Assembly: GCA_047495785.1 (NCBI GenBank)
Contig: JBLDXI010000002.1
Span: 2,294,001-2,358,000, forward strand
Direction: 5' to 3'
DNA: 64,000 nt
Source: Lepidodermella squamata
Taxonomy: Eukaryota; Animalia; Gastrotricha
The notes beneath the pieces were generated by a model. The model saw nothing but the letters and a program-made list of their open reading frames with translations, was not told the origin of the DNA and searched no databases. A program made the position numbers and the translations under genes. Numbering within the stretch: position 1 is the stretch's first letter; each line of letters opens with the position of its first letter. Positions 3,026-64,000 of this stretch are shown piece by piece.

Positions 3026-3127
3026 AACAAAAAATTAAAAAATCTAAAAAATTATAAAAAATCCGCCTTAATTTATTTTTTCAGGAAAATTACGATGAAA
3101 GCACTAAACAGCTGAAGATTTCGAATT

Positions 3128-17000: not shown

Positions 17001-18917
17001 ATTAACTATTCCCTAAAGAAAAAGCGAAAGGTTAATTATGAGATGGCAACCAGCACCCGGAGCTTTTCGAGCGCATTACACTTTAAGAATGTACAGTACA
17101 AACGTTGGTAATTATGAAGAGAAGCAACCATCTCAGCAAGTAAGCAGGACGAACCCAAACACTAAAGCCTGTACACGTTAACGACCACTCAACTCAATCC
17201 CTTTAGCTCATGCACCTGGTTGCTGGCCAAAATGCCGGCAGCAAAGAGAAATTGCGCGGGTAATTCAAATTCATGAAGGTCACATCACAATCTTGGACTA
17301 TCCTAAAATTAAGCATTTTTTAAACAATAATGATTTTATTTATTGTGCAATAAGGCTAAATAAGAGATTTTAAGATGAACATTGTTTTCGGTTTCAAATT
17401 TCAAAGTTTAAACCCGTTTCGATTTTCGATTTTGTCGACTTCTGACGATTCTTCCGACTAAGCAAATTGCCGTTCAATTGAGGGAGAAGAATTGCAAGAT
17501 TTTACACATGCATGGGTAATGGAATTCATCAATGCTAGCATACTGTGCAAATGCCTAAATGTTGGTCGCGAAATCACTGCTGGCATGGAAGCTATGTAAG
17601 CTGTCACCTGGGTTTTCAGGACTTGCCACGCTCTGTACATTGTTTCCCTCTGTTCAATAAAGTTTTGCATAAGTATCAAAACATCAATACCTTCTGCTGA
17701 GCGTTTTTCGCTGGTCTTCGCTCGCCGGTTCATCATCAAACGATAGAAAGAAATAATTCAAAGAAACAGCATCATTTGGGTTTTTACTTATAAGCCGGCC
17801 GCTGAGACGAATCATTTTCAAATACCACACCAGTTCTTGCTTAGCAAATTGCTCCTCTGTTTTTTAACTTTTATTGAATTGCAAGCTGAAAATTTTTCCC
17901 GGAATGCACACCGCATAAAAATTCCGGCCACCGTAAATCAAAATGATCATTCTCCATTCTCCGTTTGGTAAAAATCGAAATGTGCTTCCCAGATCTGATG
18001 TGTTTCACGAATATACCACAATTTCGCAGTGCATCCATGGCGTTGTAAAATAAAATAGGCGCCACCCTTTTAGCTCATGTGACGTTGGAACGTAATTTGA
18101 AGGCTGATATTATCTCGAACTTTTGAGGGGGAACAACTGTAGAAATCGGGTCGTTAGTTTGATTGAAGTCGTGCCAATTCAAGGGCATATGTCTCCTGAT
18201 CTGGGCCGATTGGCTCGTTTTACATAATGACGTTATTAAAAGCCTCATGAGACCGCCTTTTTCATTCAGCCAGCATCGATTCGATTCATCACAGCATCGG
18301 ATTTTACACTGGAATTATATTGAAGTTAACGCAAAAAACGGCAACGAATGGCAATTATTTCAGTTTTATTTCATTCATTTCATCAATATCACTTCTCTTT
18401 CTCATAAATAAAAAACAAAGATGGCGAAGTTTTCGATTTCGCTTTGTATATAATCAACAATGGTGTTCACAAAGGAGAGCAGGCATCTTCGAATAGAAGA
18501 GGTAATATAGGCAAAAAGGACACGAAAATTGCCAGCGTGAAAAGTCTCATCATCTTCATAAAAAGTGAGCTGTTCGATGTCATCATCAAGCGTGGATGTG
18601 GAAGGCCACTTGAAATATACCTACTATTATTTATATATAAAGCAACATCGTTTTCAACAAGAGATGCGTGCGAATTTCTGTACAGTCGTCATCTTTTTCG
18701 CTTCAAGGCCACGACATTCTCATAGAATATGATATTATTGGTACAATTTCATGCGTAAAAATGATAGAGATCCTTATATTAAAAAACTATGATGAGAGGA
18801 ATAAATGTACTGTAGATCGCTTGTACAATACATTAGCACGTCGCCGAATACGTAACATCGATACGCATTTTAGAAATGATTATACATACACGCACGGAAC
18901 TATACATCGAATCACCA

Positions 18918-45106: not shown

Positions 45107-47034
45107 TCAATTGTTTAATAAGTTGATTCGCACGCATGATGTCGTACCAAAAATATTAACGACACCCCATAAAGGCTGTCTATCGGCAACCGGAACTTTA
45201 TCCTCACCAAGTTGGGGCCGTTGCTCGCTGACACTGCCATCTCGCAACTCAATGAAAGTCTGCCCGTCTTCGTTGTACGTAAAAACAGCCGTTGCCCCAT
45301 TTTCGGCCAGCGTGTCACTCGCAACCCAGTAGAAAAACGCATCACCAGTTAGTAGGCAATCTTCGGTCAGTAAATCGGGATATTTTTCCGGCAGAATTGT
45401 TGGGTCGAGCGTTGTGAAGCCCAGCGCACTTCCGCCAACACAGGTATCATCGGTGAATAGGCATGAAATCTGGATTCGTTCACCTGGTCTCACCGGCCGA
45501 TCGGTAAAACAGACACTTTTCGTAAATTCATTCATGTTTTTCGTCGCTCGAAGGCCGTTGGCCGATATTTTTGCATTCACCCCGCAAACAGCATGAAATT
45601 TTACCTGTAGTTGCAAATTTAAAATTTTCTTAAAAATTTAAAAATTTGATTTGAAAAATTTAAAATTCGTCCAAATAAAATTCGGTGTTTTTTATTTTAA
45701 ATTTAAATTTCAATATTAAAACTGATAATTTAAATTCAAATTAAAAAATTAATTTCATTTTTTTTTCAATTAAAATCAGATTTTGCTATTTTACCTCTTC
45801 TCTTTCAATTTTCAAAGCATTTGTGAATTCGTTTTCTTCGTTGATTCCCGATTCGTCCTCATCATCGGCTTCGTTGTCTTCCATCGGAACTTCAACAATC
45901 GACCTTCTTTTACCGGACAAATTTTGCTCACTCTGAACAGCCAATGAAACGTTGAAGCAACTCTTAGTCTGCCGCAGCCGTTGCGGGTTGCTGAATCTAT
46001 GCACTGAATTGTGAGTTTTAATCGCGCCGAGCGACCAGCCATCGAACGATGAAACAATTTTCGCCAAATCCTCCGCTGGCCGATAGATCACGCCAGTCAA
46101 ATGGCCTTGATTTATCATTTCCATGGTTTTAATCTGCTGATCGCGAGTCATAACGTCGCAGTGAAGCTTGGCAACGTCCTGCAGGGTCAATTTCAGGACA
46201 CTAGTCGTCATTAAATGGTCGACATTTTGCTTCAACCTGGCTCGGCGTTGTTGGCAGGTTTCGATCGCTTTCCGAACTGCGTCGAGTTGGTCAGTCGCTG
46301 TTTGCCTGGCTTCCTTCACGATTTCGTCCGCCTTATTTCGAATTAAGGCGGTGATTATTCCTATCAAATCATCCGCAGCTGAATTAACTTGTTGCGTCGC
46401 TTTATCAACAGCATTCGCGTAGCATTCCGTGATTTGTTTCGTTCGCTCAGTGATGTTTTCCGTCGCCTTTGTCGCACGTTGATCGAATTTACTGCTGATA
46501 TTCCGAATTTCAACTTTCAGCCGTTCCATATGGCTGATTTGACAGGCCTGGCAAAACTGGCCCTTGCAATGTGGGCATTCGAATGAAATCTGGTCCGAAG
46601 CCGCGTGGGGGCAGCCGTCATTGCCGTAGTACCTCGTATCATCCTCATCAGCGACGGATTGAGATTTATTAAGCTGGTTCTTATTCGACGTAGTTTGCTT
46701 CATCAATTGATTTCGCATGGTTTCGACCATTCGCTGGGCTGAGATATTTGTCTGATAGCTGACGACACCCTGGGGCCCGATTGGGCTGATAACCCGGCAT
46801 TCTGGGCAAGTAACACAAGGACCTCGATTTGTCAAAGTCCTTGGAAGAGCTTCCAAACATTTCAAGCAATAGGTATGGCCACAATTCGGCAGATTTTTCG
46901 GAGTGTCGAATAAATTCGCGCAAATTATGCATTCGAATACCTGAGCGAATTGCGATAATTACGATTTAATTTTCAGTTTTATCTCAATAACTTACAGCGA
47001 GAAGTTCCTCACTTGTCTTGATTAAGGTCGCCAT
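45107..47034 (-). CDS. TRIM-like E3 ligase: RING-HC, B-box, coiled coil and C-terminal NHR (neuralized) domain (~560 aa)
   Basis: Exons 47034-46996, 46940-45795, 45604-45107 (1683 nt). RING CIIC...CGHTYCLKC...CPEC; B-box-like CPH...CPHCKGQFCQACQISH; helical region; NHR FHAVCGVNAKISANGLRA...FTDRPVRPGE...LWGVVNIFG. Confidence 0.82.
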
Positions 47035-47373: not shown

Positions 47374-48036
47374 TCAGTATTCTTCCTGCTCCTCAGCTTG
47401 GTCGCCATTCTGCTGTTGTTCAACGTTGGGTGGCGGCGGGACCAGAGCAAATTTGCAAGCCAAACAACGAATATTTTCGTGATTTTGGCACGCATTGACA
47501 ATGCACCACAAACAGGTTGGCTGCTTACTGCAGCAGGGCAGGTACAGCATAGCGGACGCCTGATTGCTTTGATTGCAAAGGCCGCAAATTGCCAACTTGC
47601 CTGTCCCACTTTCAGCTTGGCTCAAAGTCTAAAATTAAAAAATTAAAATTATAAAAAAAAATTAGGAAGTGGGGACCTCTTCATTGATCTTTTCGCCGTT
47701 TTGTTTGACTGGCGTTTGAAGGCTTCTGAACTGGAAAAAGGAATTAACAGCTGAGAGTCGCCGGTCTGAAGTGCTAGCCGTTTTCGAACCAAGATTTGTA
47801 GCCGAAGACTGGAAATTCAAAAAAATTGTTGAAGCATAAAAAATTGCGAAATTCCTCAATACATGAATGGCTTTTCGTGAGAGATGAGCAGCAGGTGAGC
47901 CGATGATCTTTTGCGGCATCTTTTCGTACCTGTTCGAAGCCATGGTTGGCGTTTTCGAATTTTGGGCTGATTTTCGCTCGGCAGCTTTCAGCAGTAATTG
48001 GCGGCTATATTCGAGCATTTTTTCACGAGAAGACAT
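47374..48036 (-). CDS. Array member G0, RING-like domain only (or the 3' part of G1)
   Basis: Last exon CGLC-x13-CC-x5-CLWC-x12-CLAC (ORF 47374-47625); upstream exon MSSREKMLEY; 5' structure uncertain. Confidence 0.6.
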
Positions 48037-48236
48037 CACATCCACTGAATTTATCTGTGCGTGTCGCAGGAAATTTAACGATGGGTGAAAAATAATTAAG
48101 GTGGAATATCACCAATACACCTGTTGCAAGCGCCTTGTCACCTGGAATAGCAATAAAACCGAAATAATTGCTCAATTTTATTATGGATCTTTGATTATAA
48201 GAGTTTGGTATAACAAGAATTTCAGTTAATTTTTTT

Positions 48237-50323
48237 TCATTGATTTCTCGACGTGCCGGGGCCTGCTGAGTTGGCGGTAAAAGGAGGCAGGACCAGGGCG
48301 AATTTGCACGCGTTGCACTTGATGGCGGCATTCGATTGCGTCGAAGCCGCGCTGACCAGGCACCACAGGCATGTCCGCTGGCGGTAGCAACACGGCATGT
48401 ACATCGTCGTCAGCGGGCAGATTTTACGGTGGCATAGCTGGCATTTCACCACACAATTCATCAATCGTGCCCGTTCCTTCGGATCCGAGAGCTTAACTGA
48501 CTGTTCGAGGGCTTTTGTTGCTTTCTCCTGTTTCGCCTTATTTCTCTTTTTCCTCGGCTTTCCAGTTGCACCAGATTCAGGTTGATTTGCGGGCGGTTCC
48601 CAAGAAACTGAACTTACATCCTTCAACGATTAAAAAAACTTGAATTATTTGAATTATTTTGATCACTAAATCGTCACCGAAATCGGGTCATCCTCCGGGA
48701 ATGATTCCGACAGCTCTCGTTTGCGACCTTTCCCTCGAACCGGTTCGACCCGTCGATGTTCCTCTTCACTCATAAACGCGCGAATCATCTGAAATATCTG
48801 AATTAATAAAAATACTTTGGTTCAAAATAAAACCCACCGAATCAACGGCTGAATCGGAATCATCAGCCTCTGAGTGGATGCTAGGTAGAGATGGCTCGAC
48901 GGGTTGGCGTTGCTTCTTCGTCGGCGAGCCTTTTAAAATGAACTCTTGCAAAAACTGAAAAAATAAAAAATTATTAAAAAAAGGAAAAATTTGAAAATTA
49001 CCTCTTCTTCATCAAATGATTTTTCAGCTTCGGAATCTGAGTCCAGAACAATCAAATCCGGCTTTTTCATCGGTTCCTTTCGGTTAGTCGAATGCACCAT
49101 TTCTTTAGAAGTTCCGGCCTGGTTGATAACTCTTGTAGAAATCTTCGCCTGTTTCGCAGTCGCAATTGCCCAAGCTTCGACTCGATCGTTAGTTGACTGC
49201 TTCTTCAAAAAAGGCGTCAAAAAAGATGAGAATAAAAATTCGTATTTCATACTTGAGGTGATTGCACTTCGGGTTTAACAGCAACTGGAGCTTTGCGGTG
49301 ATGCAATTTCGGGGTGACGGTGATGCTCTTATTCTAAAAAAGCCACCTTAATAAATTCAACGAAAAATAAAAAATAATGTCACCTGCGCAATCGAATTTT
49401 GCGGCACGCGTTCCATGTTTTGATTTGGACAAGGAGACTAGACAATTTTTTACAAAAAACAAACTCGATCTGAAAAAATTCGTTACCTGATCACTTGCAA
49501 CCGCATTTTGAACGGTTTTTGGCTTTCGTTGCGGCTTCGGCTGCACCTGAGTCTAGAATTAGGTCAAGAAAATAAGCCTTTTTATAATTTGAACGCATTA
49601 TTTATACCTTAGCTCTAACTGGCTGGTTTTCAGCGTGAATTTCATTAGCAGTTGCTTTTTCGGCCAGCTTAGCTTTCGACCGCTAGAAAGTTCGAGTGAG
49701 ACTTGAAGCAATTTTATTCCGACAAAACAAATTACCGTCACTTTAGGCTTGACAGGGGAAAGCTGCAATGTTTCCTGGACGGGGTCGTAATCTTCAGCAA
49801 TGGGACTCGAAGCTTCTTTTGGCTTGAAAAACAGTTAAAAAATAGAATAAGTCTAGGTTTTAAATAAAATTCCTACCTTAGCTTGAGCTGATTTAGCCGG
49901 AGGAGTTTTCGCTTGAGCTCTGCTAACGGCTTCTGTTTCTTCAATCGCAGCCATCAAAATATCGCGGTACTGGTCGACAGTAATTCCATCCGGATAGACC
50001 TGCCGAATGGCGGCGCAGCCTGGGCCCCGCCTCCTGCTGCCGTAGACATGATTTTGGAAAACACCATTCGCAATGATCGTTTCGCAGTACGGGCATTCCA
50101 ACGGCCGGCTGATGGAGATGTTCTTGCGAACAGAAGCTGTGAGGGCCTCGGCGATTTCGGCCTCAGATTTATCCGATTTTTTCTCTTCAGTGCGTGCAAC
50201 TTGTCGGCGGGTTGTAGGTGCCATTTTCTTCTTCGAAGCAGGCGGTCGTTTGATAAGTGTGCGGTAGTCGTCAGCAAGTGCGTTTATTTCGCCACTGCGA
50301 CCGACGATTTTTATTCTAACCAT
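48237..50323 (-). CDS. Array member G1: C2HC finger, disordered linker with SIM, PCC RING-like domain
   Basis: CPYC-x11-H-x10-C-x6-YPDG; several small exons; LIVLDSDSE; CQLC-x13-CC-x5-CLWC-x14-CNAC. Confidence 0.72.
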
Positions 50324-50537
50324 TTTTTGCAGTAAAAACGCGCGACCTCGAGTAAAAAATTGTAGCGTAAAAAGCGGACGTAGTAATAAAATCAATTAAT
50401 AAAAATCGGCTGTCGTCATCTAGATAAAAAAATCCACAACAGGAGCGTCAGTCTATTATAAGGAGTTTATTTGTCACTGCTGAGTTTTAAGAGTAATTTT
50501 TTGTAAACACGAGGTCAAGTGCTAATTTTTAAGATTT

Positions 50538-51147
50538 TTAATCGGTGGGCGGGATAAGGCCGAATTTGCAGATTTTGCAGCGAATAGTTTCGTTGTTGAC
50601 GCAAAACTTGGCTATGCACCAAATGCATGTGCGCTGACGGACGCAACACGGCAGCAACAGAGTTGAGGTGGACGAACACTGCTGACCACACAGCCCGCAA
50701 ACGGCTAGGCCCGGAGCGACGGAAAACGTGGCTTGTGGACCAACTGTCTTAACGGGAATTGCTACTTCGACATCAGGAATCTAAGAAAAATAAAATAATT
50801 CAAAATTCGCAAAATTAAGGTGGATTTTTTGTGTTTCACATTACCTCATAGACCGAAACCCAACCGTCAGTTGAAGGAGCTTCTTTGGCTAGGCGGGGTC
50901 GGGTTTTCGGAGCATCCGTCGTCTCTTCGCCATTCCGCGGTTTGCTTTCTTCGATGACTTGAGCGGCCTGAATCACCTTGCTCAAAATGTTCTTGTACTC
51001 GACGAACGTCATGCCCTGTGGGTAGGCTTTGCGAACGCCATGACAGTAAGTTTTCGGCTGATCACGCGTGCCATAAACGTGCTTTTTGAAGTTATTAATA
51101 CGCATCAAGCGCGTACAAAATGGACAAGCGACAAATTTAATTGTCAT
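50538..51147 (-). CDS. Array member G2: C2HC finger and PCC RING-like domain
   Basis: CPFC-x11-H-x11-C-x6-YPQG; second exon hand-translated as CGLCGQQCSSTSTLLLPCCVRQRTCIWC-x12-CKIC, stop at 50538. Confidence 0.75.
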
Positions 51148-51223
51148 TTTAATTAAAGTCTAAAAAAATTGAAATTCAAGAAAAACGTATTTTAAAGCAG
51201 TAATCGTAATATTTGGGAGTTTT

Positions 51224-52338
51224 CTAATTATCAGTGGTTTCGCTCTGCAAGTCAATATCGCCAGCTCTGCTCGGCGGCTCGCCCATTCGACTTTCCGCCT
51301 CCTCCTTAATTTGGACATCGTCTCTAGTCGGCGGCGTCATTGAGAAACCGCATTTCAGACATTTGACAGGCTGGTGGCGACTGAAGGCTTTCACGAGACA
51401 CCACAGGCACGTAGTTTGGCGGATACAACAGGGCAAAAGAACGGTCGAAGTGTTAACAGTTTCTTTTCCGCACACGCCGCAAATCACCATCATCGGACCA
51501 TTTAGTGGGACATCAAGATTCTAGAAGAAAAAACGATAAAATAAAGCCGCAACCAATCAGAACTCATACCTTTTTCACCGATAAACCTGGCTGAGTAGTT
51601 TTCTTAATTTTCGGCAATCGCTGGAAAAAAAGAAAAAATATTTAAGAATCACGAAAGTGCTGAAAACTCGTACAAGTTGTTTTTTCCCTGCGCGTTTGTC
51701 GATTTCTTCACTTGGAACACTGGATTCGGCCTCGTCTTCATCTGTCACTTGATCCTCTTCGTCTTCTTCCTGGGTGTCGCTCTGAGCCACAGAAGATACT
51801 GCTTGGTCCGGTTCCTGAAACATACAAGCTAAAAATGGCCACAATTCCGGTTTAACATTTTTTACCTTTCGAGCCCTACCGCGCCTTGTCACCCTCGCAC
51901 TCGTACCCGGCTGCTCCACGGTATTGTTTACCGACTCGAAAAAGTTCTGAAAAAATCGGTAAATATAAGAAATAAAACAAAAATAAATATTACTGAATAG
52001 CTTTCAGGTAATTGAATTTCGCTAGCGCCAGAACTTGAGGCGGAATCTGCTTCGTCTGCCGGGGCCTGTGGTGCCTTTCGTTTTGGTGCTGCTCGCTTCG
52101 ATGGGCCAGGTTTTGGCGGAGGTATTGAGACCGTCGATTCCTCCCCGTCCGCCACGTGATTCAGGCCTTGTTTCAGCAAAGTAACGTAGAGATCGTCGCT
52201 TACGCCATTCGGGTGAATTAAAGTGACCGCATTGCACGATGCCTTTTTCGTTTTCGTGCCGACCAGGTGCGATTTGAACATTCGATAGTTGACATTTAGC
52301 GAACACAACGAACACCAAACATTTTGCCGAGTGGTCAT
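51224..52338 (-). CDS. Array member G3: C2HC finger, acidic linker, PCC RING-like domain
   Basis: CSLC-x11-H-x10-C-x6-HPNG; CGVC-x13-CC-x5-CLWC-x12-CLKC. Confidence 0.75.
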
Positions 52339-52654
52339 TTTTCAGCTATAAGCGTGTGTCGATGATTTTATGTTGGTGGATGAAAAAATACACTGAACTG
52401 ATGGGCTTATTGCTGATAAAAAGTCGTCGTCATAAAATCAGTAAGCAATAAAATCAGCTCGCCGCCCCCTAATAAAAGTTGTTTACGTCGTTTACGAACG
52501 GAGCGACCGGCCAATCTGGGTCACCTCGTCGCAATTTAATAATTAAGAGGGAACGCAAAGGAAAAGGCATAAATTGTATAACGTCTCCAACATTTTATTT
52601 TGATGAAACGAAACAAGAAACATTTAATTGGCTGCTCGCCAAAAAATAACTTCA

Positions 52655-53702
52655 TCAGGAAGAAGGCGAGCCAAAAATAATTCTCGCTGCAAAGCCCTTG
52701 ATTGCCGAAAGCACACGGCTAGCAAACGACTGTCTCTAAAATAAATGAAAAAATAAAAATCGAAAATTAAGAAAAAAATCGCGTTCATACGTAATAACCG
52801 ACGGGCACCACTGCCGTGTTTTCGGGAATTTCATCGCTTGCCTCACTTGGCGCTTCGTCAGAAGGTTCTGAGGTAGAGATTGGCTCGGGAGTCGGCGGGA
52901 TTTCGTCCCTATCACTCGCCTCTCTCTGTTCCCTAATCTCCTCGAAAAATTTCTTCGACGACAAATCTTCTGGCCTGGCTTCAGGTTCAGCGAATTCGCC
53001 GTTTTCAGCTTGCATAAATTCCGAGGTTTCAGCTCGATTTATTTCCTAGAAAATCGGGATTTTAATAAATATCGCAGCAAAAATTAAGGTGGTTTTTACC
53101 TCTTCCAAAGTATTTTTCGACGTTCTCTTCAAGGCGCGATACGGTCGGCGATTAGGCACAACAGCTTTATTAATCAACATCTCAGCGTACCTGACAGTGG
53201 CCACTTTTTCGCCGATTTCCTCGAAAAAGGTATCGAGGGCCATGTCGTCAGATTGGGCTGCTGTGGCTTCGCTATTTTCAGCTCTTGCTTCAGCTTCTTG
53301 CTCCGCAAGTCGGAGTTTATCCTGAGAAAAAACTGATTTTTTCAGATTTTATTTAAAAATAATTTAATTTACCTGCTCACGCTTATGAATCACCAAACTT
53401 CGTTCTTCCGCGATGGGCAATGACCTGCTTTTCCGGTGATTTCTCGGCTTCGAAATCGCCTTTCGAATAGCCATCTCCGCGCTTTTCACATTCGCCGACT
53501 TATCACGCGATTGTCTCAATATATCCTTATATTCCTCGATAGCCAGCCCATCCGGGTGAAGTTTTCTCGCCTCGGCACAGGTGGGTCGCTTTTTCCCGAA
53601 GCCAATCAGGTGGCTCTTGAAGTTTTTACTTACAACTGTTTTCTGGCAGAACGGGCAGCGATGAGGCGGAGAGTAGTCCGACGTAGGAAGTGGCGTTGAC
53701 AT
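52655..53702 (-). CDS. Array member G4: C2HC finger, apparently without the RING-like domain
   Basis: CPFC-x11-H-x10-C-x6-HPDG; exons at ~53100-53320 and ~52795-53045; no Cys-rich exon found before G3; 3' end approximate. Confidence 0.65.
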
Positions 53703-54092
53703 GACTAATAAATCGGAGCAAAACTAAAGCACTATACTAATTTTGTCAAATTGCTGTATAGCTGCTGTATCCACTATAATGTTATCAATAAATCACTGGA
53801 AGGCGTGCGCGGCGTGGCTCGTCATTATGAAAAAACGGTCATCGAAATCACTGTCATAAAAGTCACTACAGAACGCGATAATATTTCGACAAAAAACTGA
53901 TAATATTTGGCAATCGATCAGCTCTATAAAATCGACCTTAAAACTTCTGTAAAATAGCAACAAAATAAATGAAAATTAAAACGGAAAAGCACAGAAAAAC
54001 AAAAAGCAGTGATTTGTTCGAGGAATTTTATTGAAAGTCTATTAACACAGCCGACAGATCTCTTTCATAATTGTCTACATATTACTGTCACA

Positions 54093-55357
54093 TCATGGAG
54101 TAGTTGCATCAATGGCGACCAAACCCGTTCGGCAATTGAAACATTTTATCGCCTGGTTGCCTTTCGCCAATCGGGTGATACACCAGAAACAAGTCGGCTG
54201 CCGGTGACAGCAAGGCAGCAACAGCGTCGAACTTGAAACAACATCGCGCGAGCAGATGGCACACCGTTCTATCGATACCGTCATTGATATCGTTCGTTTA
54301 TTGCTCGACGGTAACACTGGAGACTGCAACCCGGCCTCTTTAGGCAGCTCTGACCCATACACAGCACTCTTTTAATGAAAAAATAATAATTAAAAAAATA
54401 AACACAAAAAAATAAATACTTACTAATTTTGAAGAAATGGATTTTTCTTGAGTAATCTCTGTCTCATTTTTCTCGGCTGATGAAATGTCCTTCGAAAACT
54501 GCGAAGAGAAATAAATAAATTATTCAATTTTTAATATAAAAATTACCGGGCCATAGTCGTTTGGCGCCGCTGATTCGTTATCTTCTTGCTCAATATCAGT
54601 CGGAATTTGCGGTACATGATTGATTGCATCGAGCGATGAGTCAGCAATTTCGATAGCATCGACGTCCGATCGCAGCGAATCGAAGAACGATTGCGACGAA
54701 GATGACGCAGCCGGCTTTTCAGTTACCCGCTTTTCCTCCTCACTCGCGAGCAGCGCAAGCATTCTGTCGTCGAATGACGTGTCATCGGCTGCTTCGATTC
54801 CTCCGCCGCTTCGACTGATACCAGCAACTACCGATTTTCCGCGTTGAAAACGAACTTTTCTTGGGCTGGTTTTATCGGACGATGAAGGTTGCTGATTTTT
54901 CAGGTTAGTCATGGTATTTTCTATCACCAAATTAGCGTAGTTTACATTGACGGTTTTCTCTCCCAGTTCTTGAAGCATCGCAGTGGAATCGTTGTTCGAT
55001 GATGATCGAGTCGCGCGAGAGTTCTTTAAAAAATAAATTATCAAAAATATCGATGTAAAATTGAACTAATTTTACTTTGGGTTTATTTGAAGAGCCCTTC
55101 AGCTTCGAAATTGTGTTCGAAATGACTTTCTCTACGGTCTCAATTTTAGCAGCTTTCTGCTGCTTACCGGAATTTTTCAGGATCGATTTGTATTCTTCGA
55201 GAGACATACCGTCGGTATATTGCTCTCTTACCAGCGCGCAAATTGGGGGCTTGCCGCCCATCCCGATCAGGTGATTTTTGAAACTTTTACTAAGGATCGA
55301 TTTTTCGCAAAACGGACATCGATGAGCTTTCAGTTGAGGACGGCTAGCTGTTGACAT
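54093..55357 (-). CDS. Array member G5: C2HC finger and PCC RING-like domain
   Basis: CPFC-x11-H-x10-C-x6-YTDG; CAIC-x13-CC-x5-CFWC-x12-CFNC. Confidence 0.75.
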
Positions 55358-55552
55358 TCTTCGATAAAACCTAATGCAGAAGTCAGCAATAAAATGCGAT
55401 GTGACTAGAAGACAGTCATAAAAACGACAGCAGCAAAAAATCGACTTTTTATTACTATGTCGAAGTCATTATAACATCACTCCAATTACTATACTAGGCT
55501 TATATTATTCGATTCAAACGAAAATTCAAACATTTTATAAGGGTTTTTCATG

Positions 55553-56603
55553 TTATACAGGTGCGTTTAGTCGGACAAGGCCGGTGCGGCAGTTGAGGCA
55601 GCTCACCGGCTGATTGCTGCGGGCTAAATCGGTGATGCACCAAAAACACGTCGGCTGGCGATGGCAGCACGGCAGAAGAAGGGCTGACGTTGAAATGACA
55701 TCACGAGAACACAGGGCACATCTTTCGATTGTTATCACCATTGTACGTTTGCTCGAAACTGGAGCTTCGCATTTGACTTGCTGGCTCAAATTACAAACCG
55801 TATACTTGAATTAAAAATAATTAAAAATAATTAAGGCGGATAATTCGAATTTACGGAATAATTTTTTCGCGCAAGATCAAGCGGGGCGGAATTTTGCTGG
55901 TCAAGACTTTCAGCACCTGTCGAAATTTGGGACGATGATGCTGACATTGACATGGCACTAGACAACCGTTGAGCTGTATTCACATAGCCGTCGCTCGAAA
56001 TATTATCCACTAATTTCTGGCGAGCTATAGTTAACCGCACTCTCTCCTTCAAAATAAGTTTGATATAATAGGAAACAAGATTTGGGGCTTTTCATACCTT
56101 GTTGATTTTTTCCAAAATCGTCATAGCGCGGTAAGGCCGGCGGCTTTTTCGCTTTGATTTTCCCATGAATAGGCCAGTATATTTCGCAGGCGTTGGTTTC
56201 TCCTCTGGCATTTGAGGGCTTGATTTTTCCGGCAAAATCTTGTCTTCTTCGCAATCAGTAGCGCCATTTGAAGCCATTTCCTCATCCTAGGTATATCGAT
56301 TGGAATAAATATTCGCAAAAAGACAAAAATAATCACTTGATCAATAATTGCCGAAGTTTCCGCTAAATCGTCGGCCGCAGAATTTTTGGGGATTGGAATT
56401 TGCTCACCAGTGTAATTTAGCATTGCCCGATAATCTTCAAGAGGCAAGCCGTTTGGGTATAGCTTTTTAACCTCAGGGCAAGTTGGTCGCTTCTTCCCGA
56501 AACCGATTAGATGGCGTTTAAAATTCTTACTGACAATTGTCTTCGGGCAAAACGGGCAGTGATGCATGGTGGTACGAGCTGGCGACGAACGCGTATTAGA
56601 CAT
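55553..56603 (-). CDS. Array member G6: C2HC finger and PCC RING-like domain
   Basis: CPFC-x11-H-x10-C-x6-YPNG; CALC-x13-CC-x5-CFWC-x12-CLNC. Confidence 0.75.
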
Positions 56604-56850
56604 GGTGCTGTTGTTTAGCCAAAAAATCAGTATGAATTGATGTGTTTTATTCTCAATAAAAAGCTCGTTAGTTACGATAATATTGATGGTGACGAACGCG
56701 TGCTAGCAATTCACTCACTGGCTCGCAATCTTTCAATCGTTTTTGTCAGACACGTGCGAGTCTTTGAAGGGTTGTGTTTAAATTAAACTCGGAAAAATGA
56801 TAAAAAAAATTGCGAAATCCACCAGCTTCGAAAAATAAAAATTCGACATC

Positions 56851-56922
56851 TAGCAGAGCGTAGTTTCGATCTACAGACCTCTGGGTTATGGGCCCAGCGC
56901 GCTTCCACTGCGCCACTCTGCT
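56851..56922 (-). tRNA. tRNA-iMet: Initiator tRNA-Met (anticodon CAT)
   Basis: AGCAGAGTGGCGCAGTGGAAGCGCGCTGGGCCCATAACCCAGAGGTCTGTAGATCGAAACTACGCTCTGCTA: A1:U72 pair, three G:C pairs in the anticodon stem, ATCG T-loop characteristic of eukaryotic initiator tRNA, downstream T-run terminator. Confidence 0.97.
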
Positions 56923-56998
56923 TGTCCGAAAATTCACCGATTGAATTGCCAAAAAACACCAATTATTCAATTATTAAGGTGGATTAGGTATTGAAATT

Positions 56999-57620
56999 TT
57001 ATTCCTCAAAAGCGTGTTTACAGTTCCAACATTTCAAAGGCTTGTTCGCCTCTCGAACACACCAGAAGCATGTACGTTGAAGGTAGCAACAAGGTAGAAA
57101 TAGCATCGAAAATGTCGGCCTTGGTTCCCCACACAGCTCGCAAATGGCTGTTTGACATCGCCTCTAAAATGTAAAATTTAGCTATTTCATTGTTTAAGGT
57201 GAGTCTCACTTTTTTCGAACGAGTTGACCTGGGCATTGTCTCAGGAGAAATTTCCGAAGCGATTGAGCATGCAGGGGAGATTGGTTCGCATTTCATCATC
57301 GCATCATCGGAGGTCATAATCGTTTCTTCGGCCTTGATTACCACGTCAGCCTGGTGACTACTGCATTCATGCGATAGTTTGAATGACTGCCGCGAATGAT
57401 TTGATGAAGGCCGCCGAACGGGCACCTTGGCGCTGGCTCGAGACAAAATCTCCTTGTATTCGAGAATCGTCATGCCATTCGGGTAGGCGCTTTTCACACC
57501 TGAACAGTACGGCCCGTAGCCGTTGTAACTCATCAGGTGCTGCTTGAAATTACCGACATAGACGAGCTCGTTGCAAATCTCGCACGGGAGTTTTCGTACA
57601 TTCGCTTTACTACTGGCCAT
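56999..57620 (-). CDS. Array member G7: C2HC finger and PCC RING-like domain
   Basis: CEIC-x11-H-x10-C-x6-YPNG; after a short intron, hand-translated CELC-x13-CC-x5-CFWC-x9-CWNC, stop at 56999. Confidence 0.75.
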
Positions 57621-57929
57621 CGTCACTATTGGATCAGGCAACTAACTTTGCTGTTGATTTTCAGCTGACTGCTGATGCTTTAAGGGTCACATCTTTGAGA
57701 TCTGCCTCAGGCCGGATGCAAAACAGCTGATGCAACTATAAGTTATGGATTTTAGGAGCTAAAATTGTTTTCTCGAAAAAATTAACAAAAAATGCATATA
57801 ATCGATATTTATTGGACTCTCACTCGAAATATTTTCAATAAATCTCTAACAACTGAACGTCATTTCGATGCAGGCGTTGAAGCCCAATTAGCAATTTGAC
57901 TTTTATTTGGAGGAGGTACCAGAGAAAAA

Positions 57930-58759
57930 TTACCTGAAATAAAAATCGAGAGGATAAATTGCAAAAAAAATAATTAAGGTGGACAAACATCGCTGGCAGG
58001 ACATTGGTTTGTCGCCTTTGCTAGCAGCGGCCACGCACCAGAAACACGTTCGTTGTTTGTAGCAGCATGGCAGGCGAAGCGTGACCAAAGTTGCGACCAT
58101 TTGCCCACATAAATCGCAGGGTGCTGATTGTGCGGATTCTGAGTCATCGATCGTGTGCTGAAAAAAAATTGATTTTTTGCAATTTTCAGATGCAGTGTGC
58201 AAAATTTGCAAACCTGAGACCGGGATGAAAAATCGATTGGACTCGATTCCGCTGTATTCTCCTTGAAATTTAAAAAAAATTAAAAAAATTAACGATTTTG
58301 ATGACCTTCTTACTTGTACCGGTTTGATGACACTGACGTGGCTACTGCTTGGAGTTGACGGTTGAGGAGATGAGTTATAATGCTGAAAATATTAAAAAAA
58401 TATCAAATAAGTTAATCACGCTGAAAACTCACCTCAAAAGAGGGCGACGGGAAAACAGTTGAAATTTCAAATTCATTGCTGGAAAATTTCTGATCGAAAT
58501 TCAACGGTGCGTGACTTCGCAATCTCGCCCCTCGTCTCGCTGTTGGGACACGTCGGCTAGCCGATGACAAGATAGTTTTGTACTCCTCGAGCGACACGCC
58601 ACCAGGGTAGCGATCCTTCAAACCAGTGCAATAAGGGCCGTAGCCTTTGTAGCCCATGATGTGCTGCTTAAAATTGCCGACGAAAATTTCCTTGCGGCAA
58701 AATTCGCAGCCTAGAACTCGTCTGGGCTTTGAATTTCCCGGCTTTCTCTCGTCATCCAT
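57930..58759 (-). CDS. Array member G8: C2HC finger and PCC RING-like domain
   Basis: CEFC-x11-H-x10-C-x6-YPGG; CDLC-x13-CC-x5-CFWC-x12-CQRC; 3' end approximate. Confidence 0.72.
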
Positions 58760-59255
58760 GTTTTGAAATACACTCAAACCTATGGCGAGAAAATGTCTCA
58801 CAATATCATGTATATTTTCGGTCGATAAAAAAATGACTCAAGCGCTGGGGTGGTTGTACTAGTTAAGTATTGTAGTTTGATTATAAAAAAAGCGTAAAAT
58901 GCAGGCGGCCTAACAAACGACAGGCCGAGTACACCACGACACATCTCGTTGTTTAATGTTGAAATAAAAAAATTGCCGATCTAAAATAATAAAGCCTTTT
59001 TTTACCAGAGCGTGGCGGCGATGAATAAAAAAACAAAAAATAAATAAAAAAGCGCGGATTTTTTGCTTTCTCTAGTGCTCTCCGCGTAAAACCTGTGAAA
59101 AATAACACGCATGGATTCGTGCGTTTTTTTCATGAATTTCATCTGTTGAACTAGATTTTTTTCTTCTGAACAACGCCGAGAAAAAATATTGTAAATTAAT
59201 TGTGCAATTTTTTATTTTTCACTTCATTCACTAATTCAGTTGTGAGAATGTTCAG

Positions 59256-60248
59256 TTAGTTGCTTGTGAGAGGTACTAAACCAGTGCGGCAGTTCAAACA
59301 GCTGACGGGTTGATTGTCCCGAGCTAAGCTTGTGATGCACCAAAAACAGGTCGGCTGTCGTTGACAGCAAGGCAGTAACAAAGTAGAGGTCGACGCCACA
59401 TCCCGAGAGCAAAGGGCACAGCGTTCGAGATCGATAACCATCGTACGTTTGCGAGGAACAGGCGCCAATTCGTCGCCATCGGAATTCTCATCTTGCTCAA
59501 CAGACTGTGAAATAAATCAGGCTTAAAAAAGAGACATGAAAAAATGAATTGACGAACACTTTCCGAAATATTTATTATGTCCTGTTTTGATGCTCGTGAG
59601 ATTCTAGCCTTCGGGGGCCGAGATTTAGGCGAAGCTCCAACCATTTGTCGAGAATTAACTCGCTTTGGCGGTCGACCAAGTTTCGCCTTGGGTTTCTCTT
59701 GCACCTAAAATCGAACAAAAATAGTTAAATAATTGAATTAAAAAATAAGTATTATTTAAATAAAAATAGCAACATTTATGGAGAAAATTCCATAAAATCA
59801 CCATATCAGACGGCTGCAATTCTTCTTTTTTCACAGCGGTAACAAACTGAACATTACAACATACTTCGCTCGATTTAAACTTTTCCTCAATACGCTGGCC
59901 CGCCGTTTTCTCGCTGTTCGGAAAATCAGCTTTGTCGAAGTCTTCCAGAAAAGCCGTGACATTAAAGCCAGCAGAAGAGCCCCGGCGATTGGTGATGCTG
60001 TTAACTGAGCTGCCAGACAGCGATGGCTTCGAAAGTCGGCGAGATGATGTGCTGTCGTGCATGTCCAGCCGAAGGGCATTGGCTTCGATTTCTTTGTAAA
60101 GTGTTGAGTTCACACCGTCAGGGTAGACGGCGGACACGCCAGGACAGCTATCTTCCGGCCCACGGATATGCTGACGAAATTTTTCATTGCCGTCAATTAC
60201 CCTCGGGCAAAATGGGCATTTCCGAGATAATTTCATCGGAGCCATCAT
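59256..60248 (-). CDS. Array member G9: variant C2HC finger and PCC RING-like domain
   Basis: CPFC-x12-H-x7-C-x6-YPDG; CALC-x13-CC-x5-CFWC-x12-CLNC. Confidence 0.75.
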
Positions 60249-60574
60249 TCGAAAATTTTTGAAAAAGGCCAAGTCTGTGTAACATGTAAACAGTAGCGAA
60301 CGTTTGAAACGCAACAACTAATCTGGGAATAACCCCACCTGCTGCTTGATGCCGTAATCACAGCTTATCTAGAACGCCGACGCCTTTGAGCTAATATTTT
60401 AATCCGTTTCATATGTTACACACAAATACACCAACGGCGATATGCAGTTTTTATTATCGGATAAATGATACTTTCACATTTTTTGATTTAAGCGAAGCAG
60501 GTATATAACAAAACTAGAAATTCATTTCGGTTATTTCCCAACATTCAGGTTTTTAAGGTGGATTTTTTTCGATT

Positions 60575-62163
60575 TTAACCGCCTTTGCGCTTCGTGCTTT
60601 TTGGCTCTTTGTCGTTGACCGGCGCGTCGTCTTTGGGCGGCGGCGAGAGGCCAAAGCCACACGCCTTGCACTTGATGTGATCGTTGCGTCGGCAGGCGCT
60701 AACAATGCACCACAAACACGTCCGCTGGTTGTAGCAGCACGGTAGAAAGCAGGTCGCATGCGACGAAATTTCCTTTGCGCACAAGCCGCACTCGACCATC
60801 TCAGCTTTGCCGGCGGGCTCGGGGAACTTGGTTTTACGCTTTTTCCCTTTGTTCGACTCTGGCTGAAAAACCGATTCGTCTTCTTGCAGCTGGTTCGCAT
60901 CGCCACTGAAAATCGACGATGCAGGTTCGGAGCTGGCAGGAACTGGGGTAGGCGGGGCTTGTTTTCGTTTATTGTTCTTCTTTTGAGCTGGAGGCTGTTT
61001 CGTCTTAGGCGCGGGAGTATCCTTCGCTTGATTCTTTCTCGTCTTTTCGGCTTCGGGAGATGCATCGGGGAGCGGACCGGGAAAACGGAGATTCTAAAAA
61101 TAAATAAATAAAATAAATATTAATGAAATATGAAAAAAATTAATTATCAATATTTTTTAATTAAATTTTGATTCATTTTTTCGATTTAGCTCACCTGTTT
61201 CACCGGCGAATTTCCGCTCGCTCGTTTATTTCTCGGAGGTTCCACATCTTCGAATGCAGCCTCGCTCTGTGAAGTCGCCTGATTATTATCCGGCTGACCC
61301 GTCAACTCGCGCCAATTGTTAAAAATATTCGAAACGCTGTCGCTGAAATCAACACCATCATAATCATTTTGGCGGCGACTAGCTTTTTGCTCCTTCTTCT
61401 TGGCTTTCGGTTCAGCGACATGTGCAGCCTCGTCGTCGCTTGAAGAAAAGAACGAGTAGTTGTTCTTCAGGCGAGAGACGCTAACTTTCGGCGTGGTCGT
61501 GGGTTCGTTAGAGCGATCGGGTAATTTCTTTGGAGTCGAAATTAAAGCAGGTTTTGCAGCTGGCGTGGTCTTCATCGGAGCAGCGGAAGGCGTGGGGACA
61601 GATGAAGAAGGCTGATTCGATTTCACCATCAAGCTCTTAATTGGCTGCGGAATCTGAATAAAAATAAAAATCAGAAATAAAATCAAGAAAAATGAATAAT
61701 TACTTTTTGGCTTTGCTCGGGTGGCTTGGCTGAAATCGCTGGTAATGCGGAAGCAGAAAACGCCATAATGACTGCCTTTGACATTTGAAACTACAGAGCA
61801 AAAAATTCGAATAAATTTTGTAATTTTTAATTAACAATTGCCAACCGGATAAGTGCCATCTTTAACTTGCTCCAAGGTGATTTTGTCCTCAAGTCGCGAG
61901 TCCTTGTAAACTTGCCGGTAAACTGAAGGCGGAAGGCCATTTGGATAGGCTAATTTCATCTTCTGACAAACAGACGGAAGATCGTACCCGACATTAATGT
62001 GAGCGTTAAAATTCTTAGCGAACATGACCTGGAAAGCAAATAAAATTACATTAAAATTTTGAATTTTTCCAACAGCCATACTCACCTTGTAGCACTTTGG
62101 GCAGCGCATTAGAGGACCCGTATTCGAAACGGAAGCGTTCGAAGAAACCACAGAGTCAGCCAT
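60575..62163 (-). CDS. Array member G10: intron-split C2HC finger, long K/E/P-rich linker, PCC RING-like domain
   Basis: CPKCYK|VMFAKNFNAH-x10-C-x6-YPNG; CGLC-x13-CC-x5-CLWC-x12-CKAC; 3' end approximate. Confidence 0.72.
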
Positions 62164-62330
62164 GATCGCACGGCAAAAGAAAATGACTAATTCGTTCCTA
62201 GAGTTAAGTCAACAATGATTATTTTTTATTGATCAATGCGATGTTTTTTGCGTAAAAAATCGCGATGAATGGGCAGTGCTATACGGCGGCAAGAATTTTT
62301 TCAACATTCAGACTTTTTCGCCGATATGAT

Positions 62331-62506
62331 CGTCGTTGGATAACTTGAATTTGGGATTGTTTACTTCAGTTTTAAGGCGACAGGTGACGAATGAAAATTA
62401 AGCTGTTTTGCCTATAAAAATTCACGAAAAAACCGCCTTATTTCTATTGTCACCTATCATCTTGAAACTGTCGTAAGCCAGCAAAAACCAGAGTTATTCA
62501 ACGACG
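62331..62506. repeat. Imperfect palindrome (~176 bp), small MITE or hairpin
   Basis: CGTCGTTGGATAACT / AGTTATTCAACGACG (14/15) and inner arms CAGTTTTAAGGCGACAGGTGAC / GTCACCTATCATCTTGAAACTG (18/22). Confidence 0.6.
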
Positions 62507-63260
62507 GCAGCGTTATATTTAAAAGAAATGCCGAAGAAGAGCTAAAGTCGCAGCTCATTTGCTGATTAAAAATAAAATAAAATATGAAGTAAAATAACGG
62601 CAAAAATAAATAAAAATTCCACCTTAAAATATGGCCTGCAATGTGTTAACTTAGCACAGCATTTTAACAACGCATCTAAGAAGGCAAGAAGCTAAGCTTT
62701 TTTTAGTATGATGCGATAATATTACCACCTCTTTGTTAGCAATAAAATCGAAAAGTGACGGGGCAATAAAATCGGCTGGTAAAAGACGCTATGTGACCTA
62801 ATAAAGCCGCGAAAACTGCACGACTTCGTCCACCACTGCCAAGGGTCTTTTCCAATAGCAAAAGCAAGCATGCTATCGTCGCATATCAATGAAATGAAAG
62901 ATGATGTATGATTTGTTCTAGATCGCAAGTCGAAATTTGGAGACATTTTGTGGCAAAAAATGGCCGGAAATCACCCAACGGGTAAGTCGGCCCTGCTAGA
63001 ATTTCAGTCAGCCTTGCAAAATTTTTAACTAGGTGACTTTGAAATCCTAAACTCGAAAAAACTGGGACCTTGTTCCGAGGTGAGATTATTCGTGGCTAAT
63101 TCTATTTATTCACCCCATTTTTTCGCTTTTTTTACAGCGTAACTCGCCGATTTTTCGTCCGATTATTGTAAAACTGGAACAAGTAACCACCGCGCGCAAC
63201 GTTAGTTTTTATATCTGATGTAAAATTGTGGTATAAACCAAACGACTAGGAGTCAACTAG

Positions 63261-63690
63261 GCTGCCGCTATTCGATGAATTCTATGGGAAAGAGTCACAA
63301 AAAGTTGAAGCTCCCTACACCAGCCCGATTTACTTGGGACCTATCAAGCCTGGCAGTGGAAATTTAGAACCAATCGACTTGGCATCCGTGAACCCAGTCA
63401 GCTCAAGCGAATCAAGCGTTTCAGAATTCTTCGACGATCTATCGCCGGCTAAAAAATCGCGGAAAAAGCCGAACGAAACAACCGAAACGCCACCCGATAA
63501 TAACCGCGGAAAAACTTTGGCAAAATGCAAAATTTGTGGACTCGATGTGCCGAAGCTCACTCTGATTTGTTTGCCGTGTTGCGATGGTCAGCCGACTTGC
63601 CTGCCTTGCATCATGCGGCTGGCTTCAATTCCAAACGTGCCACTTAAATGTCTTGCTTGCGGTTTCACTGAAATACTACCGAATTCTTGA
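63261..63690 (+). CDS. Array member G11, inverted orientation, RING-like exon (5' exons unresolved)
   Basis: CKIC-x13-CC-x5-CLPC-x13-CLAC; frame open back to a possible acceptor near 63260. Confidence 0.65.
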
Positions 63691-63854
63691 TTTTAATCTC
63701 CTGCAAATTAAAATAAAACAAAAGCCGAAAAGCCTTTCATCTTTTTTATTGCCAATTTTTCCGGAAGTTCACGCGATTACAAGGTGTATTCATTGTTTCA
63801 AGGTCTCAGGGAAAAATCAAAAATTAATTGTCAGTGTCTTGAGAATTGTAATTT

Positions 63855-64000
63855 TCAGTCGAGGCGGGGTCGTTTCGACGACACGTCGCTGTGCATGACC
63901 AGTTTTCGGGGCGATGGGTGTTTCGGAAGAATGATAGCGAACTGGCAGGCGGTGCATTTGAGCGATGGCGGCTCATCGGTGCCCACGTGCTCGTTCCCAG
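63855..64000 (-). CDS. C-terminal end of a probable further array member (G12) continuing beyond the window
   Basis: Hand translation ...EPPSLKCTACQFAIILPKHPSPRK...KRPRLD*, matching the family's terminal (I/L)KCxACxF motif. Confidence 0.5.
   Translation of the reverse strand, partial: GNEHVGTDEPPSLKCTACQFAIILPKHPSPRKLVMHSDVSSKRPRLD

What the first reader, a model, noticed from the sequence alone, without database searches (positions are those of the whole stretch)
47374..64000. Tandem array of ~13 fast-diverging genes pairing an unusual C2HC finger with a PCC-type RING-like domain
Seen: ten N-terminal fingers with consensus C-x2-C-x8-F-x2-H-[LIV]xG-x7-C-x6-[YH]PxG-x5-Y, and eleven complete C-terminal domains C-x2-C-x13-CC-x2-Q-x-TC-x-WC-x9/14-C-x2-C. 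They are joined by poorly conserved low-complexity linkers with basic NLS-like patches. Known: the CC-containing C4C4 spacing resembles the RBBP6/Mpe1 RING. The CxxC-x8-F-x2-H core resembles SGF11/ATXN7-type fingers, and H-x10-C resembles some hAT BED fingers. I do not recognise the combination as a named family. Inference: a lineage-specific expansion of nuclear reader-plus-E3 proteins, analogous in logic to KRAB-ZFP or ZAD-ZNF clusters, possibly for transposon or virus silencing or germline chromatin control.
Basis: partly seen in the sequence, partly recalled or inferred. Interest (0 to 1): 0.88.

Follow-up and report, generated by a model that had tools for sequence, protein, structure and literature searches.

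The report
Tandem zinc-finger-plus-RING gene cluster
Twelve related small genes sit in a row in an invertebrate genome, most encoding a protein with an unclassified zinc finger at the front and a ubiquitin-ligase-type RING domain at the very end; the family is real, old and confined to this lineage, but it is an ordinary kind of thing (an expanded RING ligase family) whose function is untested.

Summary
Six-frame pattern searches find 10 N-terminal C2HC fingers and 11 all-cysteine RING-like domains, all within 47.4-63.7 kb and none elsewhere in the window. One finger is restored exactly by a canonical 57-nt intron. They form 12 compact genes: 9 have both domains, 1 has only the finger and 2 have only the RING.

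The C-terminal domain is predicted to have a RING fold (pLDDT 86.5), and its best solved matches are RINGs. No Pfam RING model reaches its cut-off.

The finger is a beta-beta-alpha zinc finger followed by two helices (pLDDT 82). It fits no named family. BED, Di19/RNF125, CEP104 and plain C2H2 fingers all match about equally weakly.

An exhaustive profile search of 1.84 billion representative proteins found one true relative. It lies on metagenome contigs of a distant related animal, which carry a three-gene array of the same family.

Synonymous sites are saturated between all paralogues, yet every zinc ligand is kept. The family is therefore old and constrained, and "fast-diverging" is not shown.

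Most likely these are nuclear RING E3 ligases with a private accessory finger. The transposon-silencing reading has no support. No RNA evidence could be obtained. The scan had not noted this family on other DNA.

The parts
47374..48045 (-). g1: RING-only gene. RING C1-C8 at 47455-47586. The 5' extent is uncertain.
   Evidence: RING found by regex. No finger upstream even with a loose pattern.
48237..50395 (-). g2: finger 49985-50095 plus RING 48306-48443. It has the longest linker, which carries a SIM-like LIVLDSDSE stretch.
50538..51147 (-). g3: finger 51013-51126 plus RING 50568-50699, with one intron of about 64 nt. It is the orthologue of gene LB on L001.
   Evidence: The orthologue alignment favours the intron 50781-50844.
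51224..52338 (-). g4: finger 52204-52314 plus RING 51350-51481.
52785..53702 (-). g5: finger 53547-53657 and linker exons, with no RING exon. The 3' end is uncertain.
54093..55357 (-). g6: finger 55208-55318 plus RING 54132-54263.
55553..56603 (-). g7: finger 56448-56558 plus RING 55589-55720.
56999..57620 (-). g8: finger 57474-57584 plus RING 57020-57142, with one 46-nt intron (57164-57209).
57930..58759 (-). g9: finger 58598-58708 plus RING 57987-58118. The 3' end is uncertain.
59256..60248 (-). g10: finger 60114-60218 plus RING 59289-59420.
60575..62163 (-). g11: finger 61936-62103, interrupted by a canonical 57-nt intron (62029-62085), plus RING 60659-60790.
63334..63690 (+). g12: RING-only gene on the opposite strand. 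RING at 63526-63660. The 5' extent is uncertain.

Best explanation
This is a head-to-tail cluster of 12 old paralogous genes with short introns in a poorly sampled invertebrate lineage. The genes encode small, mostly disordered proteins of roughly 170-350 aa.

Each protein starts with one C2HC beta-beta-alpha zinc finger, extended by two helices (YPxG...EYKxIL). Each ends with an all-cysteine (C4C4) RING domain at the extreme C-terminus.

Most likely they are RING-type E3 ubiquitin ligases. On this reading the RING recruits an E2~ubiquitin. The conserved finger docks onto a partner shared by the whole family. The divergent linkers give each paralogue its own localisation and target choice, through basic NLS-like patches and a recurring FF[DE][DES][ILV] motif.

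Shown: the domains, their conservation, the predicted folds and the restricted distribution. Inferred: that each pair is one transcript, E3 activity, nuclear location, and the finger's role.
For: - Motif counts and exclusive location in the array.
- Finger 10 is restored by a canonical intron.
- All zinc ligands are invariant despite about 46% column identity and saturated dS. This points to purifying selection, not pseudogenes.
- RING model: pLDDT 86.5. Foldseek's top matches are RING domains with probability 0.9-0.98 (RNF213, RBR RING1, TRIM2, RNF12). VIA gives RNF213 RING at Z 4.9, 51 aa, 2.3 A.
- The PDB profile search aligns all eight cysteines with the RBBP6 RING. The nearest Atlas clusters by features are RING families.
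- An aliphatic residue occupies C1+2 in 11/11 window copies, and K/R follows C8 in 9/14 copies. From established RING:E2~Ub structures, these are the positions of an E2 contact and of the 'linchpin'.
- The same finger-then-RING arrangement, in tandem, occurs on contigs of a distant relative, including an orthologue of g3.
- Basic patches are present in nearly all linkers. The FF[DE] motif is found only in the array.
Against: - No Pfam RING model reaches its cut-off; the best is E 0.05-0.1.
- Ligand spacing is atypical: C3 and C4 are adjacent, with five residues before C5.
- The fold Z-scores (<5) are modest, though usual for a domain of about 50 residues.
- There is no transcript evidence.
- Exact exon structures are ambiguous.
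- The conserved Trp lies between C5 and C6. In canonical RINGs the E2-contact Trp lies in the helix after C6.
- Three genes lack one of the two domains.
- The net charge of the fingers ranges from 0 to +8, so a common nucleic-acid-binding role is not evident.
Confidence: 0.6

Rival explanations
1. These are non-catalytic adaptor or corepressor proteins built like IRF2BP1/2/L. The N-terminal finger would mediate homo- and hetero-oligomerisation among the paralogues. The C-terminal RING would serve mainly as a protein-binding module, with little or no ligase activity.
For: - The overall layout is the same: N-terminal zinc finger, long disordered middle with basic patches, C-terminal RING.
- For IRF2BP proteins, PMC11260449 states that the finger interconnects the paralogues and that the RING binds partners.
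- Here the finger's helix face is the conserved part across paralogues. That fits a common partner, which could be each other.
- The IRF2BP2 RING is among the fold matches (Z 3.9).
- The ligand spacing is atypical, and the linchpin K/R is missing in 5/14 copies.
Against: - No sequence match to the IRF2BP finger or RING families at E<=1.
- The finger here is C2HC beta-beta-alpha, a different type.
- Oligomerisation was not tested.
- RING-only and finger-only genes exist in the array.
Confidence: 0.17
2. This is a genome-defence family. The finger would be a BED-like DNA or chromatin reader derived from a hAT transposase. The paralogues would diversify to target transposons or viruses for ubiquitin-dependent silencing.
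For: - The finger profile reaches a plant hAT-derived protein (P0033) at library-wide E 3.2e-4. Pfam confirms zf-BED plus the hAT dimerisation domain in that protein.
- hhalign against its two BED fingers gives 95% probability and aligns all four ligands, with the same H-L-x-G-x7-C spacing.
- The family is expanded in tandem: 12 genes here against 3 on the relative's contig.
Against: - Control comparisons with CEP104-type and plain C2H2 fingers taken from the same hit list score the same: 93.8% and 94.5%.
- zf-BED is matched by 1 of 11 fingers, at E 0.018 and below cut-off.
- The aromatic N-terminal half of BED fingers is absent.
- There is one finger per protein, and the helix residues are conserved rather than variable.
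- The paralogues are old, with no recent duplicates.
- There are no transposon features or flanking repeats.
- Nothing was found in viral contigs.
Confidence: 0.1
3. The finger is a ubiquitin-binding (UBZ-like) or RING-supporting C2HC finger, as in the RNF125/RNF114/RNF138/RNF166 ligases. It would help the ligase's own activity or read ubiquitin marks, rather than choose substrates.
For: - The nearest Atlas shape match is a cluster of RING E3 fragments carrying zf_C2HC_14 and zf-Di19 (TM 0.47).
- Foldseek aligns RNF125 (5dka) over 40 columns at 1.3 A, and the WRNIP1 UBZ over 22 columns at 1.1 A.
- zf-Di19 is the Pfam model matched by most members, 6/11 with best E 0.016.
- The C-x2-C-x11-H spacing equals that of the UBZ4/TRAF class (my own knowledge).
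Against: - All these matches are below significance: Foldseek E>0.6, TM<0.5, Pfam below cut-off.
- In RNF125 the C2HC finger packs directly after an N-terminal RING. Here it lies 100-250 disordered residues upstream of a C-terminal RING.
- There is no UIM.
- The H-x10-C spacing is longer than in UBZ4.
Confidence: 0.1

Closest known systems
C4C4 RING domains of RBBP6/Mpe1 and CNOT4
   Same: Both have eight cysteine ligands, and ligands 3 and 4 are adjacent ('PCC') as in RBBP6. The PDB profile alignment pairs all eight cysteines (2yur E 0.24; 1e4u E 0.31). The predicted fold is a RING.
   Different: Five residues rather than four lie between ligands 4 and 5. There is no DWNN domain, zinc knuckle or RRM. 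The RING sits at the extreme C-terminus. The sequence matches are not significant.
RNF125/RNF114/RNF138/RNF166 ligases (RING + C2HC + Di19-type fingers)
   Same: They also pair a RING with a C2HC beta-beta-alpha finger. The finger shows weak shape and sequence likeness (TM 0.47; 5dka at 1.3 A over 40 columns; zf-Di19 in 6/11 members).
   Different: The domain order is reversed and the domains are separated by a long disordered linker. The RING is C4C4 rather than C3HC4. There is no UIM. Nothing reaches a curated threshold.
IRF2BP1/IRF2BP2/IRF2BPL
   Same: The architecture is the same: N-terminal zinc finger, disordered middle, C-terminal RING (PMC11260449). The IRF2BP2 RING is among the fold matches (Z 3.9).
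   Different: The finger type differs and there is no sequence similarity. The IRF2BP proteins are a small conserved family, not a tandem expansion.
BED fingers of hAT-derived proteins
   Same: The H-L-x-G-x7-C spacing and the [FL]K-x-HL motif are shared with a plant BED pair.
   Different: The match is no better than controls. The N-terminal aromatic half is absent. The C2-to-H spacing is 11 rather than 13. Pfam zf-BED is below cut-off.
KRAB-ZFP / ZAD-ZNF clusters
   Same: These are also lineage-restricted tandem clusters of zinc-finger genes.
   Different: Here there is one finger per protein, the helix is conserved, the paralogues are old, and the effector domain is a RING. The likeness is in genome layout only.

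Membership tests
RING finger (cross-brace E3 domain) | Eight zinc ligands with the spacing C-x2-C-x(9-39)-C-x(1-3)-[HC]-x(2-3)-C-x2-C-x(4-48)-C-x2-C. | tested here: inconclusive
   Eight cysteines are invariant in 14/14 copies. However, ligands 3 and 4 are adjacent (x0) and ligands 4 and 5 are separated by 5 residues. Both are outside the canonical ranges and close to the RBBP6 variant.
RING finger (cross-brace E3 domain) | RING fold. | tested here: met
   AF2 model pLDDT 86.5. The best solved matches are RING domains (Foldseek probability 0.9-0.98; Z 4.9-4.0). This is a prediction only.
RING finger (cross-brace E3 domain) | A match to a curated RING profile above its threshold. | tested here: not met
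   zf-RING_4 and zf-RING_11 give at best E 0.05-0.1, 12-14 bits against a cut-off of 27.
RING finger (cross-brace E3 domain) | E2 binding and ubiquitin transfer. | not testable with these tools
   Only suggestive residues are seen: aliphatic at C1+2 in 11/11 window copies, and K/R after C8 in 9/14 copies.
RBBP6/Mpe1 | A DWNN domain and a CCHC knuckle N-terminal to the RING. | tested here: not met
   No such Pfam hits in any exon.
zf-BED (PF02892) | A profile match above cut-off, and the N-terminal aromatic signature. | tested here: not met
   1/11 members at E 0.018, below cut-off. The hhalign probability of 95% is matched by controls at 94%. The upstream GW-HG-type segment is absent.
Sgf11/ATXN7-type finger | A profile or fold match. 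| tested here: not met
   No finger member matches PF08209 at E<=1. VIA gives Z 2.4. Atlas gives TM 0.39.
zf-Di19 / RNF125-type C2HC | A profile match above cut-off and packing against the RING. | tested here: inconclusive
   6/11 members at E 0.016-1, all below cut-off. TM 0.47. The packing could not be modelled because no full-length spliced protein could be given to the tools by reference.
IRF2BP family | The IRF-2BP1_2 N-terminal C4 finger. | tested here: not met
   No Pfam hit at E<=1.
KRAB-ZFP/ZAD-ZNF-like defence clusters | Arrays of fingers with variable DNA-contact residues, and young, rapidly turning-over paralogues. | tested here: not met
   One finger per protein with conserved helix residues. 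dS is saturated and DNA identity is at most 73%, confined to three RING exons.

The most novel reading that the evidence does not exclude
The N-terminal module would be a truly new zinc-finger reader domain private to this animal lineage. The cluster would then be a set of nuclear E3 ligases that share one docking platform, such as chromatin or a ubiquitin-like mark, and use their divergent linkers to pick different targets, possibly in genome defence.
Probability: 0.12. Interest if true: 0.6.

Novelty: new variant of a known kind. Interest (0 to 1): 0.35.

Why it matters
RING ligase families often expand in single lineages, so the cluster as such is not surprising. It does add three things:
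- a compact zinc-finger module of about 55 residues, well predicted, with no family assignment and almost no relatives among 1.84 billion representative proteins;
- a rare 'CC' all-cysteine RING variant;
- a natural series of 12 paralogues in which two folded ends are conserved while the disordered middle has diverged beyond alignment.

If the proteins are active ligases, the series would be a convenient system for asking how disordered linkers set E3 specificity. It would matter mainly to people annotating this poorly sampled animal group.

Tried and rejected
**Read data**
No transcript or splice evidence could therefore be obtained.
- Two local sandbox scripts still read the whole window file or the g6 region. 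From then on the stretch was masked with N.

**Sequence searches that found nothing**
- Word-index protein searches with the 207-aa g8 ORF and with the RING alignment found nothing.
- JGI metagenome scans found nothing by tblastn. The finger alignment was too variable to seed a scan.
- The viral contig scan found nothing.

**Hits and ideas set aside**
- P0040 was the second single-stretch hit of the finger profile. It lacks the fourth ligand and sits in a polinton-like contig (rve + DNA_pol_B_2). I set it aside as probably unrelated.
- BED origin is rejected as a specific claim after the controls.
- An RNF4-like SUMO-targeted ligase idea is dropped, because only g2 has a convincing SIM-like motif.
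- Recent duplication, transposon ORFs and pseudogene array are rejected: DNA identity is at most 73% and only in three RING exons, there are no flanking repeats, and the ligands are intact.

**Limits**
- dN/dS ratios cannot be given because dS is saturated.
- The host could not be identified. The best named relatives of a neighbouring enzyme are only 35-40% identical.
- Two literature searches found no description of the family.


Full report
**Observation**

The window is eukaryotic, with GC about 0.43 and introns of about 45-60 nt with GT-AG ends.

A regular-expression scan of all six frames finds nine intact copies of C-x2-C-x8-F-x2-H-x(9-11)-C-x6-[YH][PT]xG, all on the minus strand between 49985 and 60218. 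It also finds eleven copies of C-x2-C-x13-CC-x2-Q-x-TC-x-[WP]C-x(9-14)-C-x2-C. Ten of these are on the minus strand (47455-60790) and one is on the plus strand (63526-63660).

A tenth finger at 61936-62103 is interrupted. Removing a canonical 57-nt intron (GTGAGT...TTTCCAG, 62029-62085) restores the consensus spacing exactly. This is also the best internal evidence that these are spliced genes.

Neither motif occurs elsewhere in the window.

Fingers and RINGs alternate along the strand. Each finger has a start codon just upstream, and each RING has a stop 6-17 codons downstream. The gaps between genes are only 76-496 bp.

I count 12 genes:
- nine have both domains (g2-4, g6-11);
- g5 has a finger and linker exons but no RING exon;
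- g1 and g12 have a RING but no finger.

For every finger-RING pair, open reading paths through AT-rich GT-AG introns exist. The exact exons are ambiguous without transcripts.

**No RNA evidence**

The look-up of sequencing runs listed holders under coded names, none on record as RNA. Two local sandbox scripts still read them as part of the window file, and they were masked from then on.

**The C-terminal domain**

An alignment of the 11 window copies and 3 copies from a related species keeps all eight cysteines, the proline before 'CC', and mostly Q and W.

No Pfam model reaches its cut-off. zf-RING_4 and zf-RING_11 give E 0.05-0.1.

A profile search of PDB sequences aligns all eight cysteines with the RBBP6 RING (E 0.24) and the NOT4 RING (E 0.31), both not significant.

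AlphaFold2 on the alignment gives pLDDT 86.5, with the short strands and central helix of a RING. Foldseek's best matches are RING domains with probability 0.9-0.98 (RNF213, RBR RING1 domains, TRIM2, RNF12), although E is only 0.1-0.5 for this small domain. VIA-align gives RNF213 RING at Z 4.9, 51 residues, 2.3 A, then other RING/U-box domains at Z 4-4.8. Language-model neighbours are RING families.

I conclude that it is a C4C4 RING variant of the 'CC' type.

An aliphatic residue occupies C1+2 in 11/11 window copies, and K/R directly follows C8 in 9/14 copies. From established RING:E2~Ub structures (my knowledge, not tested here), these are the positions of an E2 contact and of the linchpin.

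**The N-terminal domain**

The invariant residues are C, C, F, H, C, G and Y. The consensus is CPFC-x8-NFK-x-HL-x-G-x7-C-x2-V-x3-YPxG-x4-EYK-x-IL.

AlphaFold2 gives pLDDT 82: a beta hairpin, a helix carrying the His, then two more helices.

No solved structure matches the whole domain. Foldseek gives E>0.6 and an exhaustive VIA search gives a maximum Z of 3.2. The partial matches are beta-beta-alpha fingers:
- RNF125 C2HC, 40 columns at 1.3 A, and WRNIP1 UBZ;
- Atlas TM 0.47 for zf_C2HC_14/zf-Di19 ligase fragments, 0.44-0.45 for TRAF, XAF1 and U11-48K fingers, and 0.39 for Sgf11.

Pfam gives zf-Di19 in 6/11 members (best E 0.016), DUF7501 in 4/11 and zf-BED in 1/11. All are below cut-off.

The profile search also reached a plant hAT-derived protein at E 3.2e-4, which Pfam confirms as BED plus hAT dimerisation domain. 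hhalign against its two BED fingers gives 95.2% probability with the same H-L-x-G-x7-C spacing. However, controls with CEP104-type and ordinary C2H2 fingers from the same hit list give 93.8% and 94.5%.

The finger therefore belongs to the broad C2H2-like class. It cannot be assigned to BED, Sgf11 or any other named family.

**Distribution**

An exhaustive HMMER search with the finger profile against 1.84 billion representative proteins gave 47 hits at E<=0.001. Ten of the multi-stretch hits were put through Pfam, and nine proved to be multi-finger proteins of generic C2H2-like classes; the remaining multi-stretch hits were not examined. Only one hit is a full-domain relative (P0001, E 1.2e-11).

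P0001 lies on metagenome contigs. Contig L001 carries three tandem genes of the same family: two finger+RING genes and one further RING. One of them is the orthologue of g3, with 73% identity in the first exon and a conserved linker stretch, DGW-SVYE-P-V-V.

The same sample holds the best match (54% identity) of the window's ERMP1-like gene. The relative is therefore distant, and the g3 finger is at least as conserved as that enzyme.

Word-index searches, JGI metagenome scans and a viral scan found nothing more. Two literature searches found no description of the family.

**Age and selection**

- Paralogue identity is 22-51% in fingers and 25-81% in RINGs.
- dS is saturated for nearly all pairs, even the closest (g7/g10 RING, dN 0.19).
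- At the DNA level only the RING exons of g6, g7 and g10 are alignable, at 72-73%.
- Linkers are unalignable except for one short segment shared by g5 and g7.

The array is therefore old, and its folded ends are under purifying selection. 'Fast-diverging' is not demonstrated, and positive selection cannot be tested with these data.

**Mechanism**

The best reading (0.6) is a family of RING E3 ligases. The shared finger would dock onto a common partner, and the divergent disordered linkers would carry localisation and target motifs. Nearly all genes have K/R patches. FF[DE][DES][ILV] has six hits in the window's six-frame translation, all in the array, and five of them in coding-strand linkers.

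Rival readings:
- an IRF2BP-like non-catalytic adaptor, in which the finger oligomerises the paralogues (architecture described in PMC11260449);
- a BED-derived genome-defence reader;
- a UBZ/RNF125-like finger that supports the ligase.

The KRAB/ZAD analogy fails on its defining points: there is a single finger, and its helix is conserved.

**Verdict**

This is a lineage-restricted, previously undescribed variant of a known kind, a RING ligase family with a private accessory finger. It is of moderate interest.

Noticed in passing
window 51929-51943, 52935-52949, 53214-53228, 54673-54687 (-) and 63427-63441 (+): A short linear motif, FF[DE][DES][ILVF], often preceded by Ser or acidic residues, recurs in the linkers of g4, g5 (twice), g6 and g12. 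All 6 hits in the whole 64-kb six-frame translation lie in the array (1.6 expected by length). Looser versions occur in g1, g10 and g11. It could be a docking motif, but its partner is unknown.
   Followed up: partly
window 48936-49274 (-), linker of g2: The stretch KKPDLIVLDSDSEAEK looks like a SUMO-interaction motif (a hydrophobic core followed by an acidic/Ser run). Only g2 has a convincing one.
   Followed up: partly
window 7476-13500 versus 14297-20322: A tandem segmental duplication of at least 6 kb at 99.2% identity. It covers an ERMP1-like gene and the 3' part of a protocadherin-like gene. It is either a recent duplication or an assembly or haplotype artefact.
   Followed up: partly
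window 45107-46932 (-): Directly beside g1 lies a gene with the second half of a RING, a B-box-like CHC motif and a long coiled coil (TRIM-like). It is followed by an ORF that looks like a neuralized-homology repeat. Pfam gave no significant hit for the 359-aa ORF.
   Followed up: no
window 47374-62163: The eleven minus-strand genes are separated by only 76-496 bp; the g4 stop to the g3 start is 76 bp. Such spacing raises the possibility of co-transcription, but this was not tested.
   Followed up: no
L001 10885-10960 versus window 51009-51010: The orthologue of g3 in the related species has an intron right after YPNGM within the finger extension. g3 has none there. This is an intron gain or loss between the two species.
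   Followed up: partly
L004 1-4178: This small contig has an rve integrase and a protein-primed DNA polymerase B (polinton-like). It encodes the 89-aa zinc-finger protein P0040, which weakly matches the finger profile, including an LPDGITLEGLL stretch. P0040 lacks the fourth ligand and is probably unrelated.
   Followed up: partly
L005 1-5425: The metagenome sample that holds the related array also holds tandem ERMP1-like genes. Their products are 54% identical to the window's tandem ERMP1-like genes at 771-10178. That tandem arrangement is therefore shared by the two animals.
   Followed up: no
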